A DNA stretch of 64,000 nt from Podarcis melisellensis (Eukaryota): the NCBI GenBank assembly GCA_964234715.1, contig OZ174280.1, one strand, 5' to 3'. A program made the translations under genes and the position numbers. Position 1 is the first letter of the stretch; each line of letters begins with the position of its first letter. This document shows, piece by piece, positions 39,890-62,600 of the stretch. The notes under the pieces are model-generated. The model ran no database searches. It worked only from the letters and a program-made list of their open reading frames with translations, and was not told where the DNA came from.

Positions 39890-39942
<53 letters not shown>
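39890..39942. repeat. (TA)n microsatellite, target of the Penelope-like insertion
   Basis: Pure TA run; continues at 40574-40590. Confidence 0.97.
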
Positions 39943-39946
<4 letters not shown>

Positions 39947-39994
39947 GGTTTTGGTGTCCTCGGGTGTCTTCCCGTGTAAAAGTTGGGGTGTCTA

Positions 39995-40036
39995 GGCGAC
40001 GTTTCGACGAGGTCTCACTCGTCATCTTCAGGCTGG
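39995..40036 (-). ncRNA. Minimal hammerhead ribozyme motif, mirror copy in the left arm
   Basis: Reverse complement of 40451-40492. Confidence 0.7.
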
Positions 40037-40450
40037 TGCTTTCGGCTTCTTGTTACTGGAACAGAGCAGGATCTCAGTGTTTGAGTTCCTATAAATACTG
40101 TTGAGGGGGTGTGGTGTATAGCCTCCAATGTTCTGGGCAGAGAGGAAGTTCCCAGGCTAGTGTGCCTTTTCTTCTTTTGTTCCTTAATTACTTGAGGGAT
40201 ATCTTGAGTGATTTCTTGCAACTAATCCACACCTAATGACCCACCTAAGTGGTACTCAGGATATCACTCAAGAAATCACTCAAGATATCCCTCAAGTAAT
40301 TAAGGAACAAAAGAAGAAAAGGCACACTAGCCTGGGAACTTCCTCTCTGCCCAGAACATTGGAGGCTATACACCACACCCCCTCAACAGTATTTATAGGA
40401 ACTCAAACACTGAGATCCTGCTCTGTTCCAGTAACAAGAAGCCGAAAGCA

Positions 40451-40492
40451 CCAGCCTGAAGATGACGAGTGAGACCTCGTCGAAACGTCGCC
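40451..40492 (+). ncRNA. Minimal type I hammerhead ribozyme motif (PLE type)
   Basis: CTGAAGA (40456-62), extra T, stem II GACGAG/TGAGAC/CTCGTC, GAAA, palindromic ACGT stem III, GTC cleavage triplet. Stem I is weak (2 clear bp). Confidence 0.7.
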
Positions 40493-40839
40493 TAGACACC
40501 CCAACTTTTACACGGGAAGACACCCGAGGACACCAAAACCTGCATTCCTGTACCCGTGAAAATCTACGAAAGCATATATATATATATATACACATATACA
40601 TTATGGGAGGTTGAGAAATAACAACAAAAACATAGGGCCAAACATTTTTGTTGCTATTTCCTGACCCTACATTCTGGCTGGGCTGGTAAGATTCTGGCAA
40701 GTGGGCATCAGTAACTCTTGAGCAGAGAGGATTCCTTAATAGTGTTATGAGTTTGTGGTGTTTCAAGACTCCCTTTTTAATTTCTGGACCCCCGCTTCTA
40801 GTTCCTGAATCAGACACTAATCAGACACTGGATTTAGCA

Positions 40840-53445: not shown

Positions 53446-54064
53446 TGGCAGGTGGATAATGGTCACTGGATGCATTACCTGGCTAGTCTGGACCATTCTT
53501 TTGAAAAGGGAAATACCTTAGTTCTTGAATCCAGGTCACAGGCCTACCCTGCTCATACACTAAATATGCTCATTTGGGGAGGTTTTTCCAAGATATTCCC
53601 TTCTGCAGAGGAATATTTGGGATCATTAAAAGTCAAAATGGTTTCAGGATTGCTCTCCTGTACTATTTCAGACATATACTTATATACTTATGTATGTGTT
53701 TTTACCTTATGGACTTACGAAAATTCATTTCATCACACCCTAGAATTCTTATAAAACACCTATTGCACACCATCAAATATTTATTTCATCCTATCTTGAA
53801 AGATGGCCCATTCCTTCCTTTGTATTGAGGATTTACTGTGATTTGTTTGCAGAGAGGTTATACATTGTTGCATGAAGCAATTGCTATCTAACACTTTCCA
53901 GTGCATTTCCATCCTTATTGCCTAAAGCCCAGTTTTCTGGGGAAGCAAGTTTGTCACACAAGAGGCCCAAATCAATGCTAATGGTACAATGTGAATTTGA
54001 TGTTTGTCCTTGCTAACAGACAAACACCCGCCTCGTCCCATCTGAAGCAACTCCACACCAAAAG

Positions 54065-54682
54065 TGTGGGATGTAAACACAGGAGCAGTCAATGACAACA
54101 TTCCTAGAGTGTACATGTTAGAACATGGGGAGGGATGTCTGTCCAGCAAGCAGGTAAACTTCCTGGGGACGGACTTCCTCCGCATGTGACCAGAGGTGGG
54201 TGTGGCCTCACCTGTGCAGGTAATGATAAAAGCACAGGGCAGGCAGCCATCTCTCTCTCTTGCCTCTTGCCTCTCTCTTGCCTCTCTCTGCCATCTTCCT
54301 TCCATGAGGAACATCTAAGGATGCTCTCTTGGCTCCCAGCCAAGAGAGGAGATAAGGACTATCTTGCTACAAGATAGATTCTAAATGTATTTTACCTTTT
54401 TAAGTCTGTGTGCCTTCTGGGATCATATTGTGAACAGAACGTGAGTAAACTCTTTTATACTTTTATAAAGACTGTGTAGTGTCTTGTATTTTAAGAGGGA
54501 TCAAAGGGGAAATTACCAGAGTAATTATAGAGGTTCTAGCGAACCTGTGCACACGTTACCGTTGCAAACTAAAAAGGGAATGTTTATAAACTCTGCTGAT
54601 ATTTTGGGAACTTGTTAGCACAAGTTGGATAAGGATATAATTAGTCAATATATCCTCTCCTGCACCCCAGAACATTCCCACA
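54065..54682 (+). repeat. 5' LTR of the Copia element (618 bp)
   Basis: Starts TGTGGGA and ends TCCCACA (7-bp terminal inverted repeat). Matches 59007-59624 at a constant 4942-bp offset; the small ORFs in both copies translate identically. Confidence 0.97.
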
Positions 54683-54684
54683 AA

Positions 54685-54699
54685 GGGTTATGGGCCCAG
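54685..54699 (+). promoter_or_regulatory. Primer-binding site complementary to the anticodon arm of initiator tRNA-Met (half-tRNA primer)
   Basis: GGGTTATGGGCCCAG, 2 nt after the 5' LTR, is the reverse complement of CTGGGCCCATAACCC in metazoan tRNAiMet; same PBS type as Drosophila copia. Confidence 0.92.
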
Positions 54700-54959
54700 T
54701 ATTGCATATTTCTGCGTATTTTTGAAGGATTGCTTTGGATTGTGATTTTGAGTTGAGTAGTATTTTTCTGAGTTAACTTCCTGGTAAGCACATGGTCCTT
54801 TGTTCCATTGTGCAGTGGGGATTAAGCACCCCCCCCTTCCCTCAGAGTTCACAGTGACCCAAGGCAGTGAAGAATTATTTTGAGATTTTTGAGATTTTGA
54901 TTTTAAAATTTTGAGAAATTTTGAAATTTTGAAGAATTTTCAAATTTTTGGATTTTAAG

Positions 54960-57900
54960 ATGGCTAGAGCAGCTTTTGATAGTGATGCAAAGCTAGGAAT
55001 GCCTGTGCTGAATGAACACAATTTCATACACTGGAAGCAGCGCTTGATAGCATGTTTAGATTATAAGCACATTTTGGAAGCTTTAAAGCCTCAGCCTACA
55101 GGATCGTCTGAGGAGGATTTAGCCAAGATAAGTGCTTGGAAACGCATGAACAGCGAAGCTAGACACATAATTTTGAGTGGACTTCGTGATGAGCAGCTAT
55201 CATTAATAAATAGTACAGACGATGCATCTCAAATCTTAAGAGATATTGAGCGCGTGTATGGAGAATCTAGCATAAACTGCTTCAGAAACTTGGTGTGTAA
55301 ATTAACCAGATTGAGGATGAATTCAAAAGAGGAATTCACAGAGCACATCAACAAGTTTACTGAGATTATTCAAAGAATTGATTTGACTCCCAAAGCTTTT
55401 GATGAAGATACAAAGATAGCATTTTTGTTATCATCACTTGGACCACGCTTTAGCGCATTTGTAAGTTTGATGGATCATAGACAAGGTCTGACTTTTAAAG
55501 ACTTGATTGGTTATTTAAAAGAAGAATGCAGAGATAGAGCTGAATCTCCAGTGAGAAATGCTAGAAGCAAAGACAGTAGTTATGCATCTAGGCAATTTAC
55601 AAAGTCGAAAGAGATGCCTAAGAAAGTGATTTGTTTCAATTGTAACAAAGAAGGACACATTGCAAAGAATTGCAGGGCTCCTAAAGCAAAGAAACCCCAC
55701 CCCTTTCAGCCAAAAGGAGAAAAGAAGGGGAAATGTGAATGCACATGGCTACTGCAAGAAAGGAATTTAACAGTCCAGAATCGTGAGAATAGACGTAATA
55801 AATGGATTTTAGATTCAGGTGCCAGTTCACATTTTTCATATAAAAAGGACTATTTTAATGAGATAAATGATGAAGAAGGATCTGAAATTGAGATTGCAGA
55901 TGGCAACATTGTTAAAGCAAAAGGTGCAGGTTCCATGAGTCTGAAATGCAATATAAACAATGAATGCATTGAGAACACAATCTCTAGAGTTTTGTATGTT
56001 CCAGAGCTGAGCTGCAATTTAATTAGCGTGTCCACTTTGGACAAGAAAGGTTTCCAGATCACATTTGGAAATGGAGAATGTAAAGTGACTAGAAATGGCA
56101 AAGTGTTTGCTCAAGCAAAGCTAATCAATGGTGTATATGAGCTTGATCTTTCAGAGGATCAGTCTGCAAAAGTGGCACATTCCAGCCAGAAGGATGAAGC
56201 AGATCTGGACCTATGGCACAGAAGGCTTGGACATAGAGACACCAACGTCATTCTGGATCTACAGAAAAGAGATCTTGTAAGAGGTTTGCAGGTAAAGCAG
56301 AGGAACAAAGCTCCAGCAAAATGCATAAGCTGTATTACTGAGAAGGCTGTAAAACCTTCATTTCCACGTTGTGCAGAACAAAGAAGCAACAAAGTGCTTG
56401 ACATAGTGCACACTGACATATGTGGACCCATGAATGTTCCCTCACTGGGAAAGAATAGATATATTTTAATATTTCTGGATGACTTTTCAAGATTTTGTGT
56501 TGTATATTTCCTCAAAGAGAAGAGTGAGACAGTGGACAAGCTCCAGGAATACATTGCCATGGTCAAGAATAAATTCCAAAGAGCTCCAGCTGTGCTAATG
56601 AGTGACAATGGAGGTGAGTACTGCTCAAATGAAACGCAGGCTCTCCTGGCCAAGGAAGGAATTGCACACGTAACCACAATTCCTTACACACCACAGCAGA
56701 ATGCCATAGCTGAGAGAAAGTTTAGGTCCATTATGGACATGACAAGGTGCATGCTAAAGGATGCATGTTTGCCACAGAAGCTGTGGGCCGAAGGAGTGTA
56801 CACGTCGGTCTATTTGCAGAATAGACTGCCAACTAAAGGTGCAGAGCGCACACCATTTGAACTTTGGCATGGGAAAGCTCCCAATCTTTCGCACATACGT
56901 GTGTTTGGAAGTCCGTGTTACTTCCACGTGCCCAAAGAACACAGACACAAGCTTGACTCCAGGGCAAAAGCAGGTATCCTTGTGGGATATGCCTCTGGAG
57001 GCAAAGGATACAGAATTATGGACTTACAAACTGGTAAGACAAATGCATACCATGCGGTTTATTTTGATGAATATGGAAAAGTAGACACTAAGAACACTGT
57101 TGTGGATTCTTCAGATGAGTCAGAAAGGACTCAAGAGTTTGTATATTTCCCTTTTGAGACCCCACAAAGTAATAATCTGCCTTCGAGTGTTACAGCGCCC
57201 CCTACAGGCAACACACTAGAAGACGCAGAGGACCAGAACCCTGGCGGCACCAGAGACGAAGATGAGGACTCAGATGGGGACATGCCTGCGTTGGAGGAGG
57301 ATGAGGAAGCTGATGCGGTTGCAGAACCAGAGGTCAGACGCTCGTCCAGAACCAACAAAGGTGTCCCACCATTACGGTTGTCCTACTTTGCAGGGTCGGC
57401 GTTTCCACAGGAACCTTCCACTTGGGAAGAGATACAGGAGATGCCAGCTGCAGAAGCCAGTCTCTGGAGGAAGGCCGCGCAGGAGGAGATGGATGCACTG
57501 CATCAGAACAAGACCTGGACACTCACTGAGCTGCCTCCCGGTAAGAAGGCCATTGGCAGTAAATGGGTTTTCAAGGTTAAGAAGGGGTCAGAAGGAGAAG
57601 TGCAGCGCTACAAAGCTAGACTTGTAGCACAGGGATTTTCACAGCGTTTTGGTGAAGACTATGATGAAGTTTTTGCACCAACCGTGAGGTACAGCAGTGT
57701 AAGAATGCTTTTAAGCATTGCAGCCTCCAAGAAAATGAGGGTGAAACACATAGACATTGCTACCGCTTTTCTACATGGGCAGATTTCTGAAGAAATTTAT
57801 ATGAAACAGCCCAAAGGTTTTGTGAAACCACATGAGGCACATTTAGTGTACAAACTCCAGAAAGGACTTTATGGACTTAAACAGGCTGCCAGAGCCTGGA

Positions 57901-58961
57901 ATCAGAAGTTGCATAAAATGCTGACGCAACTTGGGTACAAGCAAGGCGACGCTGACAAGTGCTTGTACAGTAAATCAAATAATGGACAATTCTCATATAT
58001 CCTAGCATTTGTTGATGACCTGATTATTGCCACAGCAAGTGAGAAAGACTATATACAGATAGTAAAACACCTTAGCAAAGAGGTGGAGGTCAAGGAGCTA
58101 GGAGATGTCCAGTACTACCTTGGGATCCAGGTGGAAAGAGAAGAGGACGGCTCATTTCTTCTCAGCCAAAGACAGAAGATCCACGAGCTAATTGAGCACA
58201 TGCAGATGCAAGACGCACATCCAGTTGCTACACCGATGGCTACTGACTTCCTGAAGAATCAGCAGGATTCAAAGCAGTTACCAGACAACAATGACTACAG
58301 GTCGGCGATTGGTAAACTTTTGTATTTAGTTACCACATGTAGACCTGACTTAGCTAATGCTGTGGGGATTCTTAGCAGAAAAGTGAATTCTCCCACTGAG
58401 CATGATTGGGCAGGTGTAAAGAGGGTAGTGCGATATTTGAAGGGTACCATGAATTGTAAATTAAGGTTACCAGCCGTCAGAGACCCTAAGTTGGTTGGGT
58501 ATACTGATGCGGATTGGGCTGGGGATAATGCTGATTATAAATCAACAAGTGGTCATGTTTTCATGTTTGGTGATGGACCTGTTTCATGGGGCAGTTATAA
58601 ACAGAGCTGTGTAGCATTATCTTCCACAGAATCAGAATACGTTGCAGCAACAGAAGCCTGCAGAGAGATCGCCTGGCTTGATCAACTCATAAAGGACTTT
58701 GGGTTGGTGAGAAAAGGGCCTGTCAGCTTGCTGGAGGACAATCAAAGTTGCCTGAAGCTGACGCAGAGTGAGAAGTTCCTGGCCAGAACAAAACACATTG
58801 GGGTTAAATACCACTACATACGCCAGATGATCCAGGATGGACTTGTGGAACTATCCTACTGCAGCACCCAAGAGATGACTGCTGACATCCTGACGAAACC
58901 CCTACCAAGAGAGAGTTTCCAGAATCTACGTGTCAAGCTGGGACTCTGGGTGGTTGAATAA
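54960..58961 (+). CDS. gag-pol: Copia Gag-Pol polyprotein (1333 aa from ATG 54960; the ORF track starts at upstream TTG 54948)
   Basis: Zinc knuckle CFNCNKEGHIAKNC; protease WILDSGASSH; integrase HHCC (LWHRRLGH...CISC), catalytic core (VHTDICGP, SDNGGEY, PQQNAIAER) and GKGY; RT (YKARLVAQGFSQ, LYGLKQ, FVDD); RNase H (GYTDADWAG, SSTESEY, ADILTKPL). No stops or frameshifts. Strong Kozak context AAGATGG. Confidence 0.97.
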   Translation: MARAAFDSDAKLGMPVLNEHNFIHWKQRLIACLDYKHILEALKPQPTGSSEEDLAKISAWKRMNSEARHIILSGLRDEQLSLINSTDDASQILRDIERVYGESSINCFRNLVCKLTRLRMNSKEEFTEHINKFTEIIQRIDLTPKAFDEDTKIAFLLSSLGPRFSAFVSLMDHRQGLTFKDLIGYLKEECRDRAESPVRNARSKDSSYASRQFTKSKEMPKKVICFNCNKEGHIAKNCRAPKAKKPHPFQPKGEKKGKCECTWLLQERNLTVQNRENRRNKWILDSGASSHFSYKKDYFNEINDEEGSEIEIADGNIVKAKGAGSMSLKCNINNECIENTISRVLYVPELSCNLISVSTLDKKGFQITFGNGECKVTRNGKVFAQAKLINGVYELDLSEDQSAKVAHSSQKDEADLDLWHRRLGHRDTNVILDLQKRDLVRGLQVKQRNKAPAKCISCITEKAVKPSFPRCAEQRSNKVLDIVHTDICGPMNVPSLGKNRYILIFLDDFSRFCVVYFLKEKSETVDKLQEYIAMVKNKFQRAPAVLMSDNGGEYCSNETQALLAKEGIAHVTTIPYTPQQNAIAERKFRSIMDMTRCMLKDACLPQKLWAEGVYTSVYLQNRLPTKGAERTPFELWHGKAPNLSHIRVFGSPCYFHVPKEHRHKLDSRAKAGILVGYASGGKGYRIMDLQTGKTNAYHAVYFDEYGKVDTKNTVVDSSDESERTQEFVYFPFETPQSNNLPSSVTAPPTGNTLEDAEDQNPGGTRDEDEDSDGDMPALEEDEEADAVAEPEVRRSSRTNKGVPPLRLSYFAGSAFPQEPSTWEEIQEMPAAEASLWRKAAQEEMDALHQNKTWTLTELPPGKKAIGSKWVFKVKKGSEGEVQRYKARLVAQGFSQRFGEDYDEVFAPTVRYSSVRMLLSIAASKKMRVKHIDIATAFLHGQISEEIYMKQPKGFVKPHEAHLVYKLQKGLYGLKQAARAWNQKLHKMLTQLGYKQGDADKCLYSKSNNGQFSYILAFVDDLIIATASEKDYIQIVKHLSKEVEVKELGDVQYYLGIQVEREEDGSFLLSQRQKIHELIEHMQMQDAHPVATPMATDFLKNQQDSKQLPDNNDYRSAIGKLLYLVTTCRPDLANAVGILSRKVNSPTEHDWAGVKRVVRYLKGTMNCKLRLPAVRDPKLVGYTDADWAGDNADYKSTSGHVFMFGDGPVSWGSYKQSCVALSSTESEYVAATEACREIAWLDQLIKDFGLVRKGPVSLLEDNQSCLKLTQSEKFLARTKHIGVKYHYIRQMIQDGLVELSYCSTQEMTADILTKPLPRESFQNLRVKLGLWVVE

Positions 58962-58995
58962 AGTTGTTTATGTTTTGTATAATGTTGTATTGCCT

Positions 58996-59004
58996 GAGAA
59001 GGGG
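58996..59004 (+). promoter_or_regulatory. Polypurine tract of the Copia element
   Basis: GAGAAGGGG ending 2 nt before the TG start of the 3' LTR. Confidence 0.9.
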
Positions 59005-59006
59005 TA

Positions 59007-59624
59007 TGTGGGATGTAAACACAGGAGCAGTCAATGACAACATTCCTAGAGTGTACATGTTAGAACATGGGGAGGGATGTCTGTCCAGCAAGCAGGTAAA
59101 CTTCCTGGGGACGGACTTCCTCCGCATGTGACCAGAGGTGGGTGTGGCCTCACCTGTGCAGGTAATGATAAAAGCACAGGGCAGGCAGCCATCTCTCTCT
59201 CTTGCCTCTTGCCTCTCTCTTGCCTCTCTCTGCCATCTTCCTTCCATGAGGAACATCTAAGGATGCTCTCTTGGCTCCCAGCCAAGAGAGGAGATAAGGA
59301 CTATCTTGCTACAAGATAGATTCTAAATGTATTTTACCTTTTTAAGTCTGTGTGCCTTCTGGGATCATATTGTGAACAGAACGTGAGTAAACTCTTTTAT
59401 ACTTTTATAAAGACTGTGTAGTGTCTTGTATTTTAAGAGGGATCAAAGGGGAAATTACCAGAGTAATTATAGAGGTTCTAGCGAACCTGTGCACACGTTA
59501 CCGTTGCAAACTAAAAAGGGAATGTTTATAAACTCTGCTGATATTTTGGGAACTTGTTAGCACAAGTTGGATAAGGATATAATTAGTCAATATATCCTCT
59601 CCTGCACCCCAGAACATTCCCACA
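59007..59624 (+). repeat. 3' LTR of the Copia element (618 bp)
   Basis: Direct repeat of 54065-54682, followed by the TSD AAAAG. Confidence 0.97.
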
Positions 59625-62600
59625 AAAAGTGGCCCACTTAACAGAGATAGGAAGCTAAAACTCTAGAACCAGCCTCTGCAACAAACTCTGATGCAAACTC
59701 TGAGCGACATATCTATCTGAGTAAGAGCACCATTATGGACCCAAACAACACCAATCATACCATCGAGGGTTCATTTGCCTGCACATCTTCCATTCAAACT
59801 GAACTGCCTCTACACAATGGGCACAAAACAGATGTTAAAATGATAAAATCTTTTCAATCCCCCTAGTCATTCCATAAGAAACAGATTTGCAAGCCACCAT
59901 ACTTCACCATGATGAATGAGATTTCAGTGGGAAACTACCAAGTTGGGATTCATATGCAGATTTGACACTATCGGATCTGGACTGAATAGAAACTGGGAGT
60001 GGCTAGCTCATGATGTGTTTATTCATCTTGCTTTAGCTTTCCCTTATCACTTGGGGGTGGGTCACTCCCACTCTTACTGAACCTTTTCTCTTTTTCAGTT
60101 GATTGCATTTAACTCTGCATCAGAATGGGGCACACCTATCTCTTGTATTGTGGGCCTGGTCTCAGGGATTTATTTCCTAAAACTCTTCACCCTTCTCTTC
60201 TTCTGACTCTGCTCATGTAACCACCACTCATGTATGTATTGTACTGTAAAAGTGACCTGTGAAAGCTAAAGCTACAAAACCAAGGCTACATACACACAAA
60301 AATCTGCTGCAAGTGTCACTCTACATTCTCCATAGGACAAACCTCCCAGTCACTATGGAGGACAATAAACATCTACAAATCTGCCATTAGAAATGACATG
60401 TAGGAAAACATCTCAAGCACTCAGTACCCTGTCCTTCTGATCTGAAGGTGACAACACCTGAGCAAAGGAATGTCAAAGGGAGGCTCCAATGCGAAACTGC
60501 AAGACAGCTCATCAAGATCTTTTAATTCTATTTAATTAGGCCTGAAGAGCAACAATGAGTTTGGATCACACACTATAGATACTAATTAGCACAGCCTTTT
60601 TAAGTTGATTACTCCATCATCTGTCACTTGTTGTCAAAGGTTACTGTGTTTATTTTGTATACATTCCAAGCTTAATTCAATTTTCACTGGATACTTCCTA
60701 CCTTTTATTTTGTTCTTATTTCACTGCTTACTGTCACACACACCCATACCTGTAAACGGAGTACTTCGTGTATCTGATAAAACTGGAAGCTATTACAGAG
60801 TTTAATTTCTGCTAGCTCTCTTTATATTTTTTTTGTAAACCGCTTTTGGGGCTCGCCTGAAAAGCAGCATATAAATATCTCAAATAAATAATAAAGAAAC
60901 AAACCGTGCACTCCTATGCATGCCTTATTCCCAGGCAAGTGAGTATAGGATTGCTGTCAAAGCCTGCAAGTCTAGATGCTTTACTTTGATGCAATTCTTA
61001 TAATTAGCACACAGTTAATAGGATCTGATTGGGTGATACTGAGCTCTGACTGGGCTGATCCAATATTGCACAAGCAGATGTCCACTCATGTCTTGGGACT
61101 TCCCCTTCTTCTCTTGCCACCCCTTGCTCCCCTCAAAACTGCTCTGGACCCCTTGGAGTAGATTCAGAGGACATGCAAGGGGAGGGGAGTGAAAGGGGAA
61201 GTCCCATTGCATGAGTGGACATCTGCTTGTGCAATATTGGACTGCTTGTGCAATCTGTTCTTCTTCTGCATGGACATGACTGGATACAACCCCAAACCTA
61301 TAGTCATTTGGTTAGGGCTGGGGTTGATGGGAGTTGGCACTGAGTTGCCACAGGAGAAATACGTAGATGGAGGGGTGTGTGTGTGTGTGTGTGTGTGTAC
61401 AAACACACGTATATGATACAGATGGGTACGTATGGGTGTAAACACACAGATCCCATTCATTATCATCATATGGGTTTCATGTACAAATCGCACAAGTATG
61501 TGTGCCTCTTCCACACCCAGCCAGACCTCTCTTTCCTCACCAGGCTGCAGGAGGTTTTGCTTGTAAACAGCAGTCACTTAGTAACACTCTTAATCGGTTG
61601 CCGCTGGACGATTATTCATCCCAGGCTAACCTTAAACCCTGCCCCTTCTCCGCAAGGCACCCTTAGAACAGAGGAAATTCCACAGCTCTGAGGTGATGTG
61701 AAACAAAACATGAGCTGCCATCCCAAGTCCCAGCCAAACTCTCTCTCTCCTCCCTGCCCCCCCTCTCTCTGACACTTTCCAATAAAGCAGGGCTCTCCCT
61801 CTGCATATTCCCCCCTTCCCCCCTTCTTCATCCTTTTCTGGTTTAGGCATTGTAACCCGATAGGCTGGAAATGCAGTTTCTTTCATCTTCCATTTCCCAC
61901 ATCCTGAGAGTCTGGAGAGAAGGAGCCCACCCAGAGAAAGGAATTCCAGGCATGTGGCTTCCTTTCCATCCCCCAACCCCCCATGTGGCTCCATTCACAA
62001 AGCAGATTAGCAATGGCAAGAAGGCCTCCATTGAGCCTCTCCCCACAACTCTTCCCTTCCTCCTCCTCCTCCCCCTCCCACTCCCCCAAAAAAGAGGAGA
62101 GGGGAAAAGCACTCTATAGGAAATATCCCAGGTACAAACTATGCCTTTTCTGTGGCACCAGGGCAAAACTTCTCTGTGGTCCTTCTTCCATCCCCCGAAC
62201 AGAAAACTTGGCTCTTAAACTGGGCTTCCCTCTTTTATCACAAGGAATGGAATTCAGAATTCTTCCTTGGTCTGAAAGAAGCCTGAAAGGCAAATAACAA
62301 GCATTCTTACACACCCAACAAATAATATAGTGGTGGCATCATGATCTATGGGAGATCTCAAGGCATGCAAAAGGGTGGACAACTACAAAGAAGTGCAAGT
62401 CCAGAAAGTTCAAACCACAGCAGCAGTACCAGCAGATAATCACTCTCATGAAAATTACATTGGTTTTTAAGAGCTCAAGCTTAATGCTTGCGCCACCCCC
62501 CACCACAAAAGAAAAAAAGTGCTGTGCATCCATAACTCATGCTGGCCATAGGGAGTTGCGTGTTACCAGCACCAAAAGTGAAAATATGTGGTGGAGAATC

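What the first reader, a model, noticed from the sequence alone, without database searches (positions are those of the whole stretch)
54685..54699. Half-tRNA priming: PBS matches the anticodon arm of tRNAiMet, not its 3' end
Seen: GGGTTATGGGCCCAG 2 nt after the LTR, with no canonical TGG(TATCA) PBS. Established: Drosophila copia and yeast Ty5 (Hemivirus type) prime with a 5' fragment of initiator tRNA-Met cut near the anticodon stem. Inference: replication here needs a tRNAiMet 5' half with a free 3'-OH, linking the element to host tRNA-fragment biology in a vertebrate.
Basis: partly seen in the sequence, partly recalled or inferred. Interest (0 to 1): 0.72.

Follow-up and report, generated by a model that had tools for sequence, protein, structure and literature searches.

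The report
Half-tRNA primer site in lizard Copia
A young, intact Copia-type jumping gene in a wall-lizard-type genome has a primer-binding site that pairs with the anticodon arm of initiator tRNA-Met, the known "half-tRNA" priming of fly copia and yeast Ty5, so it is a sound but largely expected case.

Summary
GGGTTATGGGCCCAG sits at 54685-54699, 2 nt (AA) after the 5' LTR of an intact Ty1/Copia element (54065-59624). The element has identical 618-bp LTRs, a 5-bp target duplication and a 1333-aa gag-pol ORF.

The 15-mer is the exact reverse complement of canonical nt 27-41 (the anticodon arm) of vertebrate initiator tRNA-Met. No 3'-end-type PBS is present.

At least 16 of 80 distant Copia relatives from metagenomes carry the same core (GGTTATGGG...) right after their LTR. 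PBS type follows the RT tree, and the lizard element sits on the half-tRNA side. Half-tRNA priming is therefore the best reading (about 0.85), but it is inferred from sequence only.

This is a known kind. Hemivirus-type priming is established, and Mtanga-like Copia are already reported as abundant in squamates.

One small difference stands out. The relatives abut LTR-CA|GGTTATGGG and PPT|TG directly. This element has a 2-nt spacer at both ends and one extra G, which suggests a 40-nt primer and integrase end-trimming.

The host's own tRNA gene could not be fetched, and who cuts the tRNA is unknown.

The scan has already noted other intact Copia copies in this genome, one with a "bipartite" tRNA-iMet PBS. 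No significant second site was found here.

The parts
54060..54064 (+). Left copy of the 5-bp target-site duplication (AAAAG)
   Evidence: Direct reading. The same 5 nt follow the 3' LTR.
54065..54682 (+). 5' LTR, 618 bp, with termini TGTGGGA...TCCCACA
   Evidence: 100% identical to 59007-59624.
54683..54684 (+). 2-nt spacer (AA) between the LTR CA and the PBS. It is not complementary to tRNA-iMet nt 42-43.
   Evidence: Relatives have no spacer here.
54685..54699 (+). Primer-binding site: 15 Watson-Crick pairs with canonical nt 41-27 (the anticodon arm, including the CAT anticodon) of initiator tRNA-Met
54700..54702 (+). Possible 3-bp extension of the primer duplex (G:U, A-U, G:U with tRNA nt 26-24)
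   Evidence: Weak and may be chance.
54877..54961 (+). Leader tandem repeat (ATTTTGAG)n, about 10 copies, running into the start codon
   Evidence: Function unknown.
54960..58961 (+). Uninterrupted gag-pol ORF (1333 aa from the ATG): Copia-type gag, CCHC knuckle, protease barrel, integrase, RVT_2 reverse transcriptase / RNase H
   Evidence: 97% identical to Podarcis lilfordi proteins.
58996..59004 (+). Polypurine tract GAGAAGGGG
   Evidence: Direct reading.
59005..59006 (+). 2-nt spacer (TA) between the PPT and the LTR TG, mirroring the AA spacer at the PBS
   Evidence: In relatives the PPT abuts TG.
59007..59624 (+). 3' LTR, 618 bp
59625..59629 (+). Right copy of the target-site duplication (AAAAG)
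   Evidence: An empty-site contig joins 54059 to 59625 in two runs.

Best explanation
Positions 54685-54699 are the minus-strand primer-binding site of a young, intact Ty1/Copia retrotransposon that is probably Mtanga-like. The site pairs with the anticodon stem-loop of initiator tRNA-Met and not with a tRNA 3' CCA end. Reverse transcription must therefore start from a 5' fragment of tRNA-iMet whose new 3'-OH lies in the 3' strand of the anticodon stem. This is hemivirus-type 'half-tRNA' priming, as in Drosophila copia, 1731, Ty5 and Osser.

Shown: the complementarity, its position next to the LTR, the Copia architecture, and the same PBS core in related elements.

Inferred: that the tRNA fragment is really used. 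Also inferred is where it ends. It most likely ends at canonical C41, giving a 40-nt fragment one nucleotide longer than copia's. The duplex begins there, and both LTR ends carry a symmetric 2-nt spacer (PPT-TA-TG...CA-AA-PBS), which predicts 2 extra bp on each cDNA end that integrase trims.

Not known: which nuclease makes the cut (host RNase P-like activity, another host nuclease, or the element's own RNase H acting on the annealed tRNA).
For: - **Position and chance.** An exact 15-nt match sits 2 nt after the LTR and was never seen in shuffles.
- **Identity of the motif.** It is the reverse complement of the anticodon arm in the printed tRNA-iMet sequence, and the pair-by-pair layout agrees. 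In 65 of 75 independent contigs holding the 15-mer, it lies antisense in a tRNA-Met(CAT) gene.
- **Element type.** Domain order is gag-PR-IN-RT, with a 5-bp TSD and TG..CA LTRs.
- **Relatives.** Of 80 metagenome relatives, at least 16 have GGTTATGGG(CCCAG) next to the LTR CA. Most of these sites lie upstream of gag-pol; in four contigs the site follows pol and a single collapsed LTR. The LTR-PBS junction was confirmed for L077, L085, L087 and L102. About 24 relatives have the 3'-end type TGGTATCAGAGC instead.
- **Tree.** PBS type needs only 2 changes on the RT-RNase H tree against 12.8 for shuffled labels (0 of 500 shuffles as low). The lizard element lies in the half-type part, in a 99%-supported clade with an Anopheles protein and L077, which itself has CA|GGTTATGGG.
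- **No other primer.** There is no 3'-end PBS and no LTR sequence complementary to the PBS.
- **Recent use.** Identical LTRs, an open ORF and an empty-site allele in two runs show that this PBS worked in a recent replication cycle.
- **Literature.** Half-tRNA priming is the defining trait of hemiviruses.
Against: - No biochemical evidence exists: no strong-stop cDNA and no primer fragment has been observed.
- The host's own tRNA-iMet gene was not available. The window has no tRNA, so a human sequence from a paper served as proxy.
- Unlike every relative examined, the PBS does not abut the LTR CA, so the register of priming is uncertain (a 39-nt primer with a 3-nt gap, or a 40-nt primer with a 2-nt gap).
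Confidence: 0.85

Rival explanations
1. Same half-tRNA mechanism, but with the classic copia register. The primer is the 39-nt fragment ending at canonical C40, and AAG (54683-54685) is a 3-nt gap copied from the template. The third G would then match C41 only by chance.
For: All relatives examined start their PBS with GG directly after CA, which corresponds to a primer ending at C40. PMC1181622 states that hemivirus cDNA synthesis starts from the 3'-OH of nucleotide 40. A single matching base has a 1-in-4 chance.
Against: Complementarity runs through the third G. The spacer would be 3 nt at the PBS side but 2 nt at the PPT side, whereas relatives are symmetric at 0 and 0.
Confidence: 0.25
2. 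The element is primed by the 3' CCA end of some other host tRNA that pairs with TGGGCCCAGTATTGC... starting at 54690.
For: This is the only TGG within 30 nt of the LTR end.
Against: It lies 7 nt from the LTR. It would need a tRNA ending ...CTGGGC-CCA, which would begin with CCCAG; to my knowledge that is unusual for eukaryotic tRNAs. The same bases are fully explained by the 15-nt tRNA-iMet match shared with related elements.
Confidence: 0.02
3. Self-priming (Tf1 or TAR type), or a relic PBS that no longer functions. The match would then be inherited and unused.
For: Self-priming exists in some LTR elements (PMC6317226).
Against: No sequence complementary to the PBS exists in the LTR or anywhere else in the window, even with up to 2 mismatches. 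The copy is very young (identical LTRs, empty allele) and the match is perfect, as expected for a PBS that is renewed from the primer in each cycle.
Confidence: 0.03

Closest known systems
Drosophila copia, 1731, yeast Ty5 and Volvox Osser (ICTV genus Hemivirus, family Pseudoviridae)
   Same: Gag-PR-IN-RT order, a single gag-pol ORF, a 5-bp TSD, and a PBS complementary to the anticodon stem-loop of initiator tRNA-Met instead of its 3' end.
   Different: The PBS is set off from the LTR by 2 nt and pairs one nucleotide further (canonical C41). The PPT is also set off by 2 nt. The host is a lizard.
Mtanga-clade Copia of Anopheles, and the Mtanga-like Copia reported in squamates, tuatara and frogs (PMC11889832, PMC7116210, PMC4131045)
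   Same: The host group is the same: Lepidosauria are reported to hold only Mtanga-clade Copia, often in very high copy number. The nearest named relative on my tree is an Anopheles atroparvus protein.
   Different: Those papers classify by RT/RNase H and do not describe the PBS (PBS has 0 occurrences in PMC11889832). The Mtanga reference itself was not in my tree.
GalEa / Zeco1-like Copia of fishes and crustaceans
   Same: They are Copia elements of vertebrates and other animals that also use tRNA-iMet.
   Different: They use the 3' end of the tRNA (PBS TGGTAGCAGAGC; PMC3587641). No such site is present here.
Plant Osser, Bryco and Gymco-II lineages and fungal Copia with 1/2tRNA-Met PBS
   Same: The PBS is complementary to half tRNA-Met, and PBS type is characteristic of the lineage (PMC6317226, PMC10886601).
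   Different: Different kingdoms. The PBS follows the host's own anticodon arm; for example, L127 has GGTTATGAGCCC.

Membership tests
Ty1/Copia (Pseudoviridae) | Polyprotein order gag - protease - integrase - reverse transcriptase/RNase H, with RVT_2-type RT and Copia-type gag | tested here: met
   Pfam hits along the ORF in order: Retrotran_gag_2, zf-CCHC, Pol_BBD, gag_pre-integrs, rve, SH3_retrovirus, RVT_2.
Ty1/Copia (Pseudoviridae) | LTRs with TG...CA termini, a 5-bp target-site duplication, and a PBS and PPT at the inner LTR borders | tested here: met
   Identical 618-bp LTRs, TGTGGGA...TCCCACA termini, TSD AAAAG, PPT GAGAAGGGG.
Hemivirus-type (half-tRNA priming) elements | PBS complementary to an internal part (anticodon stem-loop) of initiator tRNA-Met and not to the 3' acceptor end | tested here: met
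   15 of 15 Watson-Crick pairs with canonical nt 27-41. No 3'-end PBS is present.
Hemivirus-type (half-tRNA priming) elements | A tRNA 5' fragment found as the primer on minus-strand cDNA or in virus-like particles | not testable with these tools
   This needs biochemistry. The RNA-seq reads laid cannot show it.
Hemivirus-type (half-tRNA priming) elements | PBS directly abutting the LTR CA with the primer ending at nucleotide 40, as in copia and all relatives seen here. This is typical of the group but not formally defining. | tested here: not met
   There is an AA spacer plus an extra G. Relatives show ACA|GGTTATGGG.
Hemivirus-type (half-tRNA priming) elements | Phylogenetic grouping with copia, 1731, Ty5 and Osser | not tested
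   The reference sequences were not obtainable. The tree does place the element among relatives with half-type PBS. PMC1181622 notes that half-tRNA and full-tRNA users are not cleanly separated on full-length trees.
Mtanga clade of metazoan Copia | RT/RNase H clusters with the Anopheles gambiae Mtanga reference | tested here: inconclusive
   The element sits in a 99%-supported clade that includes an Anopheles atroparvus protein. The literature says lepidosaurs hold only Mtanga Copia. The Mtanga reference itself was not in the tree.

The most novel reading that the evidence does not exclude
This lizard Copia family may have shifted the register of both priming events by 2 nt. It would use a 40-nt tRNA-iMet fragment cut between canonical C41 and A42, so its linear cDNA would carry 2 extra bp at each end and need retrovirus-like 3' end-processing by integrase. 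Its relatives, in contrast, make flush ends. Because the family is active now and present in many copies, it would be a vertebrate system in which the unknown nuclease that makes half-tRNA primers with a 3'-OH can be identified.
Probability: 0.35. Interest if true: 0.45.

Novelty: new member of a known kind. Interest (0 to 1): 0.3.

Why it matters
Half-tRNA priming has been demonstrated experimentally only in fly copia and yeast Ty5, and how the tRNA is cut to leave a usable 3'-OH is still unsettled. An intact, recently mobile vertebrate element with a perfect anticodon-arm PBS shows that this mechanism operates, or very recently operated, in an amniote. It also offers natural material for mapping the primer end, for example lizard gonad tissue.

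Two practical points follow. Small RNAs from the 3' end of tRNAs, which are proposed to restrain mammalian LTR elements (abstracts of PMC7472051 and bioRxiv 10.1101/2025.05.12.650695), would by my inference not pair with this anticodon-arm PBS. LTR annotation pipelines that look only for TGG-type PBS will also miss the PBS of squamate Copia.

Apart from that, the finding fits existing knowledge of Copia lineages.

Tried and rejected
- The DNA of the 97%-identical Podarcis-type copies and of the closest protein relatives (P0006-P0013) could not be fetched, so PBS conservation within the family and its nearest clade rests on L077 alone.
- **Host tRNA not available.** The window has no tRNA gene and no tool gives access to the rest of the genome. 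I used the human sequence printed in PMC8216282 and typed its first 40 nt into one script.
- **Second ('bipartite') pairing site.** I tested tRNA nt 1-26 against the rest of the leader. The duplex energy was -23.2 kcal/mol against -18.8 +/- 2.5 for shuffles, and 5.7% of shuffles were as low. This is not significant.
- **L068.** A viral-collection contig with the motif but no tRNA proved not to be an LTR element: it has no LTR repeats.
- **Papers not held.** The original mtanga paper and Ke et al. 1999 on Ty5 could not be read.
- **First tree run.** The run with the mixture model did not finish. The reported tree is LG+G4 with a quick search and SH-aLRT support only.
- **Earlier findings searches.** Searches of the scan's findings by sequence and by the words 'copia pbs trna met anticodon' were blank.
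- **RNA reads.** They were too few (205 reads) to define the transcription start, the polyA site or the strand.

Full report
**1. What is there**

The window holds one complete LTR retrotransposon at 54065-59624.
- Its two LTRs (54065-54682 and 59007-59624) are 618 bp long and 100% identical. They begin TGTGGGA and end TCCCACA.
- They are flanked by a 5-bp target-site duplication, AAAAG.
- Between them lies one uninterrupted ORF of 1333 aa from the ATG at 54960.
- The Pfam hits run in the order Copia-type gag, CCHC knuckle, protease barrel, GAG-pre-integrase, integrase core, SH3-like domain and RVT_2 reverse transcriptase. This is the Ty1/Copia order.
- A polypurine tract, GAGAAGGGG (58996-59004), lies 2 nt (TA) before the 3' LTR.

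**2. The observation**

GGGTTATGGGCCCAG is at 54685-54699, exactly as reported, 2 nt (AA) after the last base of the 5' LTR. It occurs once in the window, and no exact match arose in 100 dinucleotide-preserving shuffles. No 3'-end-type PBS follows the LTR. The only in-element match to TGGTAGCAGAGC has two mismatches, lies in gag about 350 nt downstream, and is at chance frequency.

**3. What the motif matches**

The initiator tRNA-Met sequence printed in PMC8216282, and again in PMC8274982, contains CTGGGCCCATAACCC, the exact reverse complement of the motif. In canonical tRNA numbering this is nt 27-41: the 5' strand of the anticodon stem, the whole loop with the CAT anticodon, and the first three Cs of the 3' strand.

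This tRNA lacks position 17, so canonical C41 is the 40th physical nucleotide.

Pair by pair:
- There are 15 Watson-Crick pairs at 54685-54699.
- A possible G:U, A-U, G:U extension follows at 54700-54702, and then mismatches.
- On the other side, the spacer AA faces tRNA A42 and G43 and cannot pair. This follows from reading the sequences.

As an independent check I searched the 15-mer in the viral contig collection. In 65 of 75 contigs it lies antisense inside an ARAGORN-called tRNA-Met(CAT) gene. Some giant-virus contigs carry tRNAs whose 5' halves closely resemble the eukaryotic initiator.

The host's own tRNA-iMet gene could not be examined.

**4. Relatives**

The polyprotein is 97% identical to proteins of Podarcis lilfordi and to several assemblies of public runs. 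Identity then drops to 39% and below. The host is therefore a wall-lizard-type lacertid.

I instead fetched 80 distant Copia loci (28-42% identity) from metagenome contigs.
- At least 16 carry GGTTATGGG, mostly followed by CCCAG, next to an LTR end. About a dozen of these sites lie upstream of gag-pol. In four contigs (L079, L081, L100, L117) the site follows pol and a single LTR, which I read as the two LTRs collapsed in assembly.
- About 24 carry the 3'-end type TGGTATCAGAGC instead.
- Where LTR pairs could be found (L077, L085, L087, L102), the LTR ends in ...ACA and the PBS begins at the very next base.

On a maximum-likelihood tree of the RT-RNase H region (87 rows, LG+G4, SH-aLRT support), PBS type needs only 2 changes, against 12.8 for shuffled labels (0 of 500 shuffles as low). 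All half-type loci lie on one side of the tree.

The lizard element lies on that side, in a 99%-supported 12-row clade with an Anopheles atroparvus protein and L077. L077 is the only member of that clade with DNA. It has ...CCAACA|GGTTATGGG, a shorter half-tRNA-iMet PBS.

**5. Mechanism**

A PBS that pairs with the inside of a tRNA cannot be extended from the tRNA's natural CCA end. A 5' fragment with a new 3'-OH at the end of the duplex is required. This is the hemivirus mode described for copia, 1731, Ty5 and Osser (PMC1181622, PMC10886601, PMC8515867) and for some plant and fungal Copia lineages (PMC6317226, PMC10886601).

I take it as the working mechanism here with about 0.85 confidence. 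The copy is very young, so this PBS served in a recent cycle:
- the LTRs are identical and the ORF is open;
- a contig joining 54059 to 59625 without the element (the empty site) is present in runs of two organism labels.

What is shown is sequence complementarity and its phylogenetic pattern. That the fragment is used, and where it ends, are inferred.

**6. A difference from the relatives**

In the relatives the PBS abuts CA and starts with GG. That corresponds to a primer ending at canonical C40, the 39-nt fragment. The PPT also abuts the LTR TG directly in L077, L102, L087, L079 and L100.

Here both junctions carry 2 extra nt (PPT-TA-TG...CA-AA-PBS), and the PBS has a third G that pairs with C41.

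The symmetric reading is a primer ending at C41 (40 nt) and a linear cDNA with 2 extra bp on each end, which integrase removes as in retroviruses. The alternative is the classic 39-nt primer with a 3-nt gap. I put these at roughly 3:1. Only sequencing of the RNA-DNA junction can decide.

**7. Who cuts the tRNA**

That is possible but not required.

The cut predicted here lies in the stem (C41/A42 or C40/C41), not in the loop. From my own knowledge, stress-induced tRNA halves are cut in the loop and carry a cyclic phosphate, which is not a 3'-OH. Also from my own knowledge, not from tools, RNase P has been proposed for copia, and the RNase H of Tf1 is known to cut an RNA duplex to make its primer. 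By analogy the element's own RNase H is a candidate. A search for 39-40-nt fragments in total small-RNA data could therefore be negative even if the mechanism is right.

**8. Comparison with what is known, and novelty**

Copia elements are reported in 23 of 24 squamate genomes studied, often in thousands of copies. Lepidosaurs are reported to hold only the Mtanga clade (PMC11889832). The tuatara genome paper notes an abundant Mtanga-like element, and a Copia insertion causes amelanism in corn snakes.

The reads agree with a multi-copy, widely shared family. Twenty runs from nine organism labels and eleven studies hold much of the element. Word depth is high over the interior and 5-10 times higher over the LTRs, although depth is not a copy number.

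None of the papers I could read describes the PBS of vertebrate Copia, and fish GalEa/Zeco elements use the tRNA 3' end. The explicit statement that a squamate Copia uses the half-tRNA site is therefore a small addition, and the 2-nt spacer register is a minor variant. I class the finding as a new member of a known kind, with interest 0.3.

**9. Earlier notes of this scan**

Other windows of this genome have notes on intact, young and polymorphic Copia copies. One note reports a 'bipartite tRNA-iMet PBS' on another piece. I tested a second pairing site in this element and found nothing significant.

**10. Limits**

- The host tRNA gene and other copies' PBS were not seen.
- The tree used a quick search.
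- The RNA reads (205 reads, both orientations, low depth) show only that family members are transcribed at a low level in one organism.

Noticed in passing
window 54059/59625: A contig joins the two flanks without the element (it skips 5565 nt, with 7 nt ambiguous at the joint, which fits the TSD). It is present in run X1 (organism A, depth 26.7) and run X5 (organism B, depth 14.6). The insertion is therefore absent or polymorphic in other individuals or species.
   Followed up: partly
window 54065-59624: The family is held by 20 runs from 9 organism labels and 11 studies. Summed word depth is about 1800-2000 over the interior in X1 and 5-10 times higher over the LTRs, which suggests many copies and many solo LTRs. 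Depth is not a copy number.
   Followed up: partly
window 54877-54961: The leader just upstream of, and running into, the gag start codon is a degenerate tandem repeat (ATTTTGAG)n of about 10 copies. Its function is unknown.
   Followed up: no
window 54000-59700: In RNA run X23 (organism D) only 205 reads were laid. Over the LTRs most first mates lie on the - strand, and over the interior most lie on the + strand. This could mean sense LTR-containing transcripts and antisense internal transcripts, or only noise.
   Followed up: no
L062 11778-11849, L067 852-923, L071 9085-9157: These viral contigs, of which L067 is named as a giant-virus MAG, carry tRNA-Met genes whose 5' halves closely resemble the eukaryotic initiator tRNA-Met, including the identical anticodon arm.
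   Followed up: no
L077 1-70 and 4290-4472: This is the closest relative with DNA. It has an LTR of only about 183 bp and a short 9-nt half-tRNA PBS (GGTTATGGG) abutting CA, and its PPT GAGGAGGAG abuts TG. The contig is a collapsed single-LTR assembly.
   Followed up: partly
protein hits P0001-P0006: Identity falls abruptly from 97-78% (Podarcis-type sequences) to 39% for the next relatives, one of which is from a mosquito. This may reflect poor annotation of transposon proteins in vertebrate genomes or a patchy, possibly horizontal, history of the clade, as discussed in PMC11889832.
   Followed up: no
window 39942-40573: Other first-reader notes on this window report a 277-bp inverted repeat with hammerhead-ribozyme motifs. 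I did not examine it.
   Followed up: no
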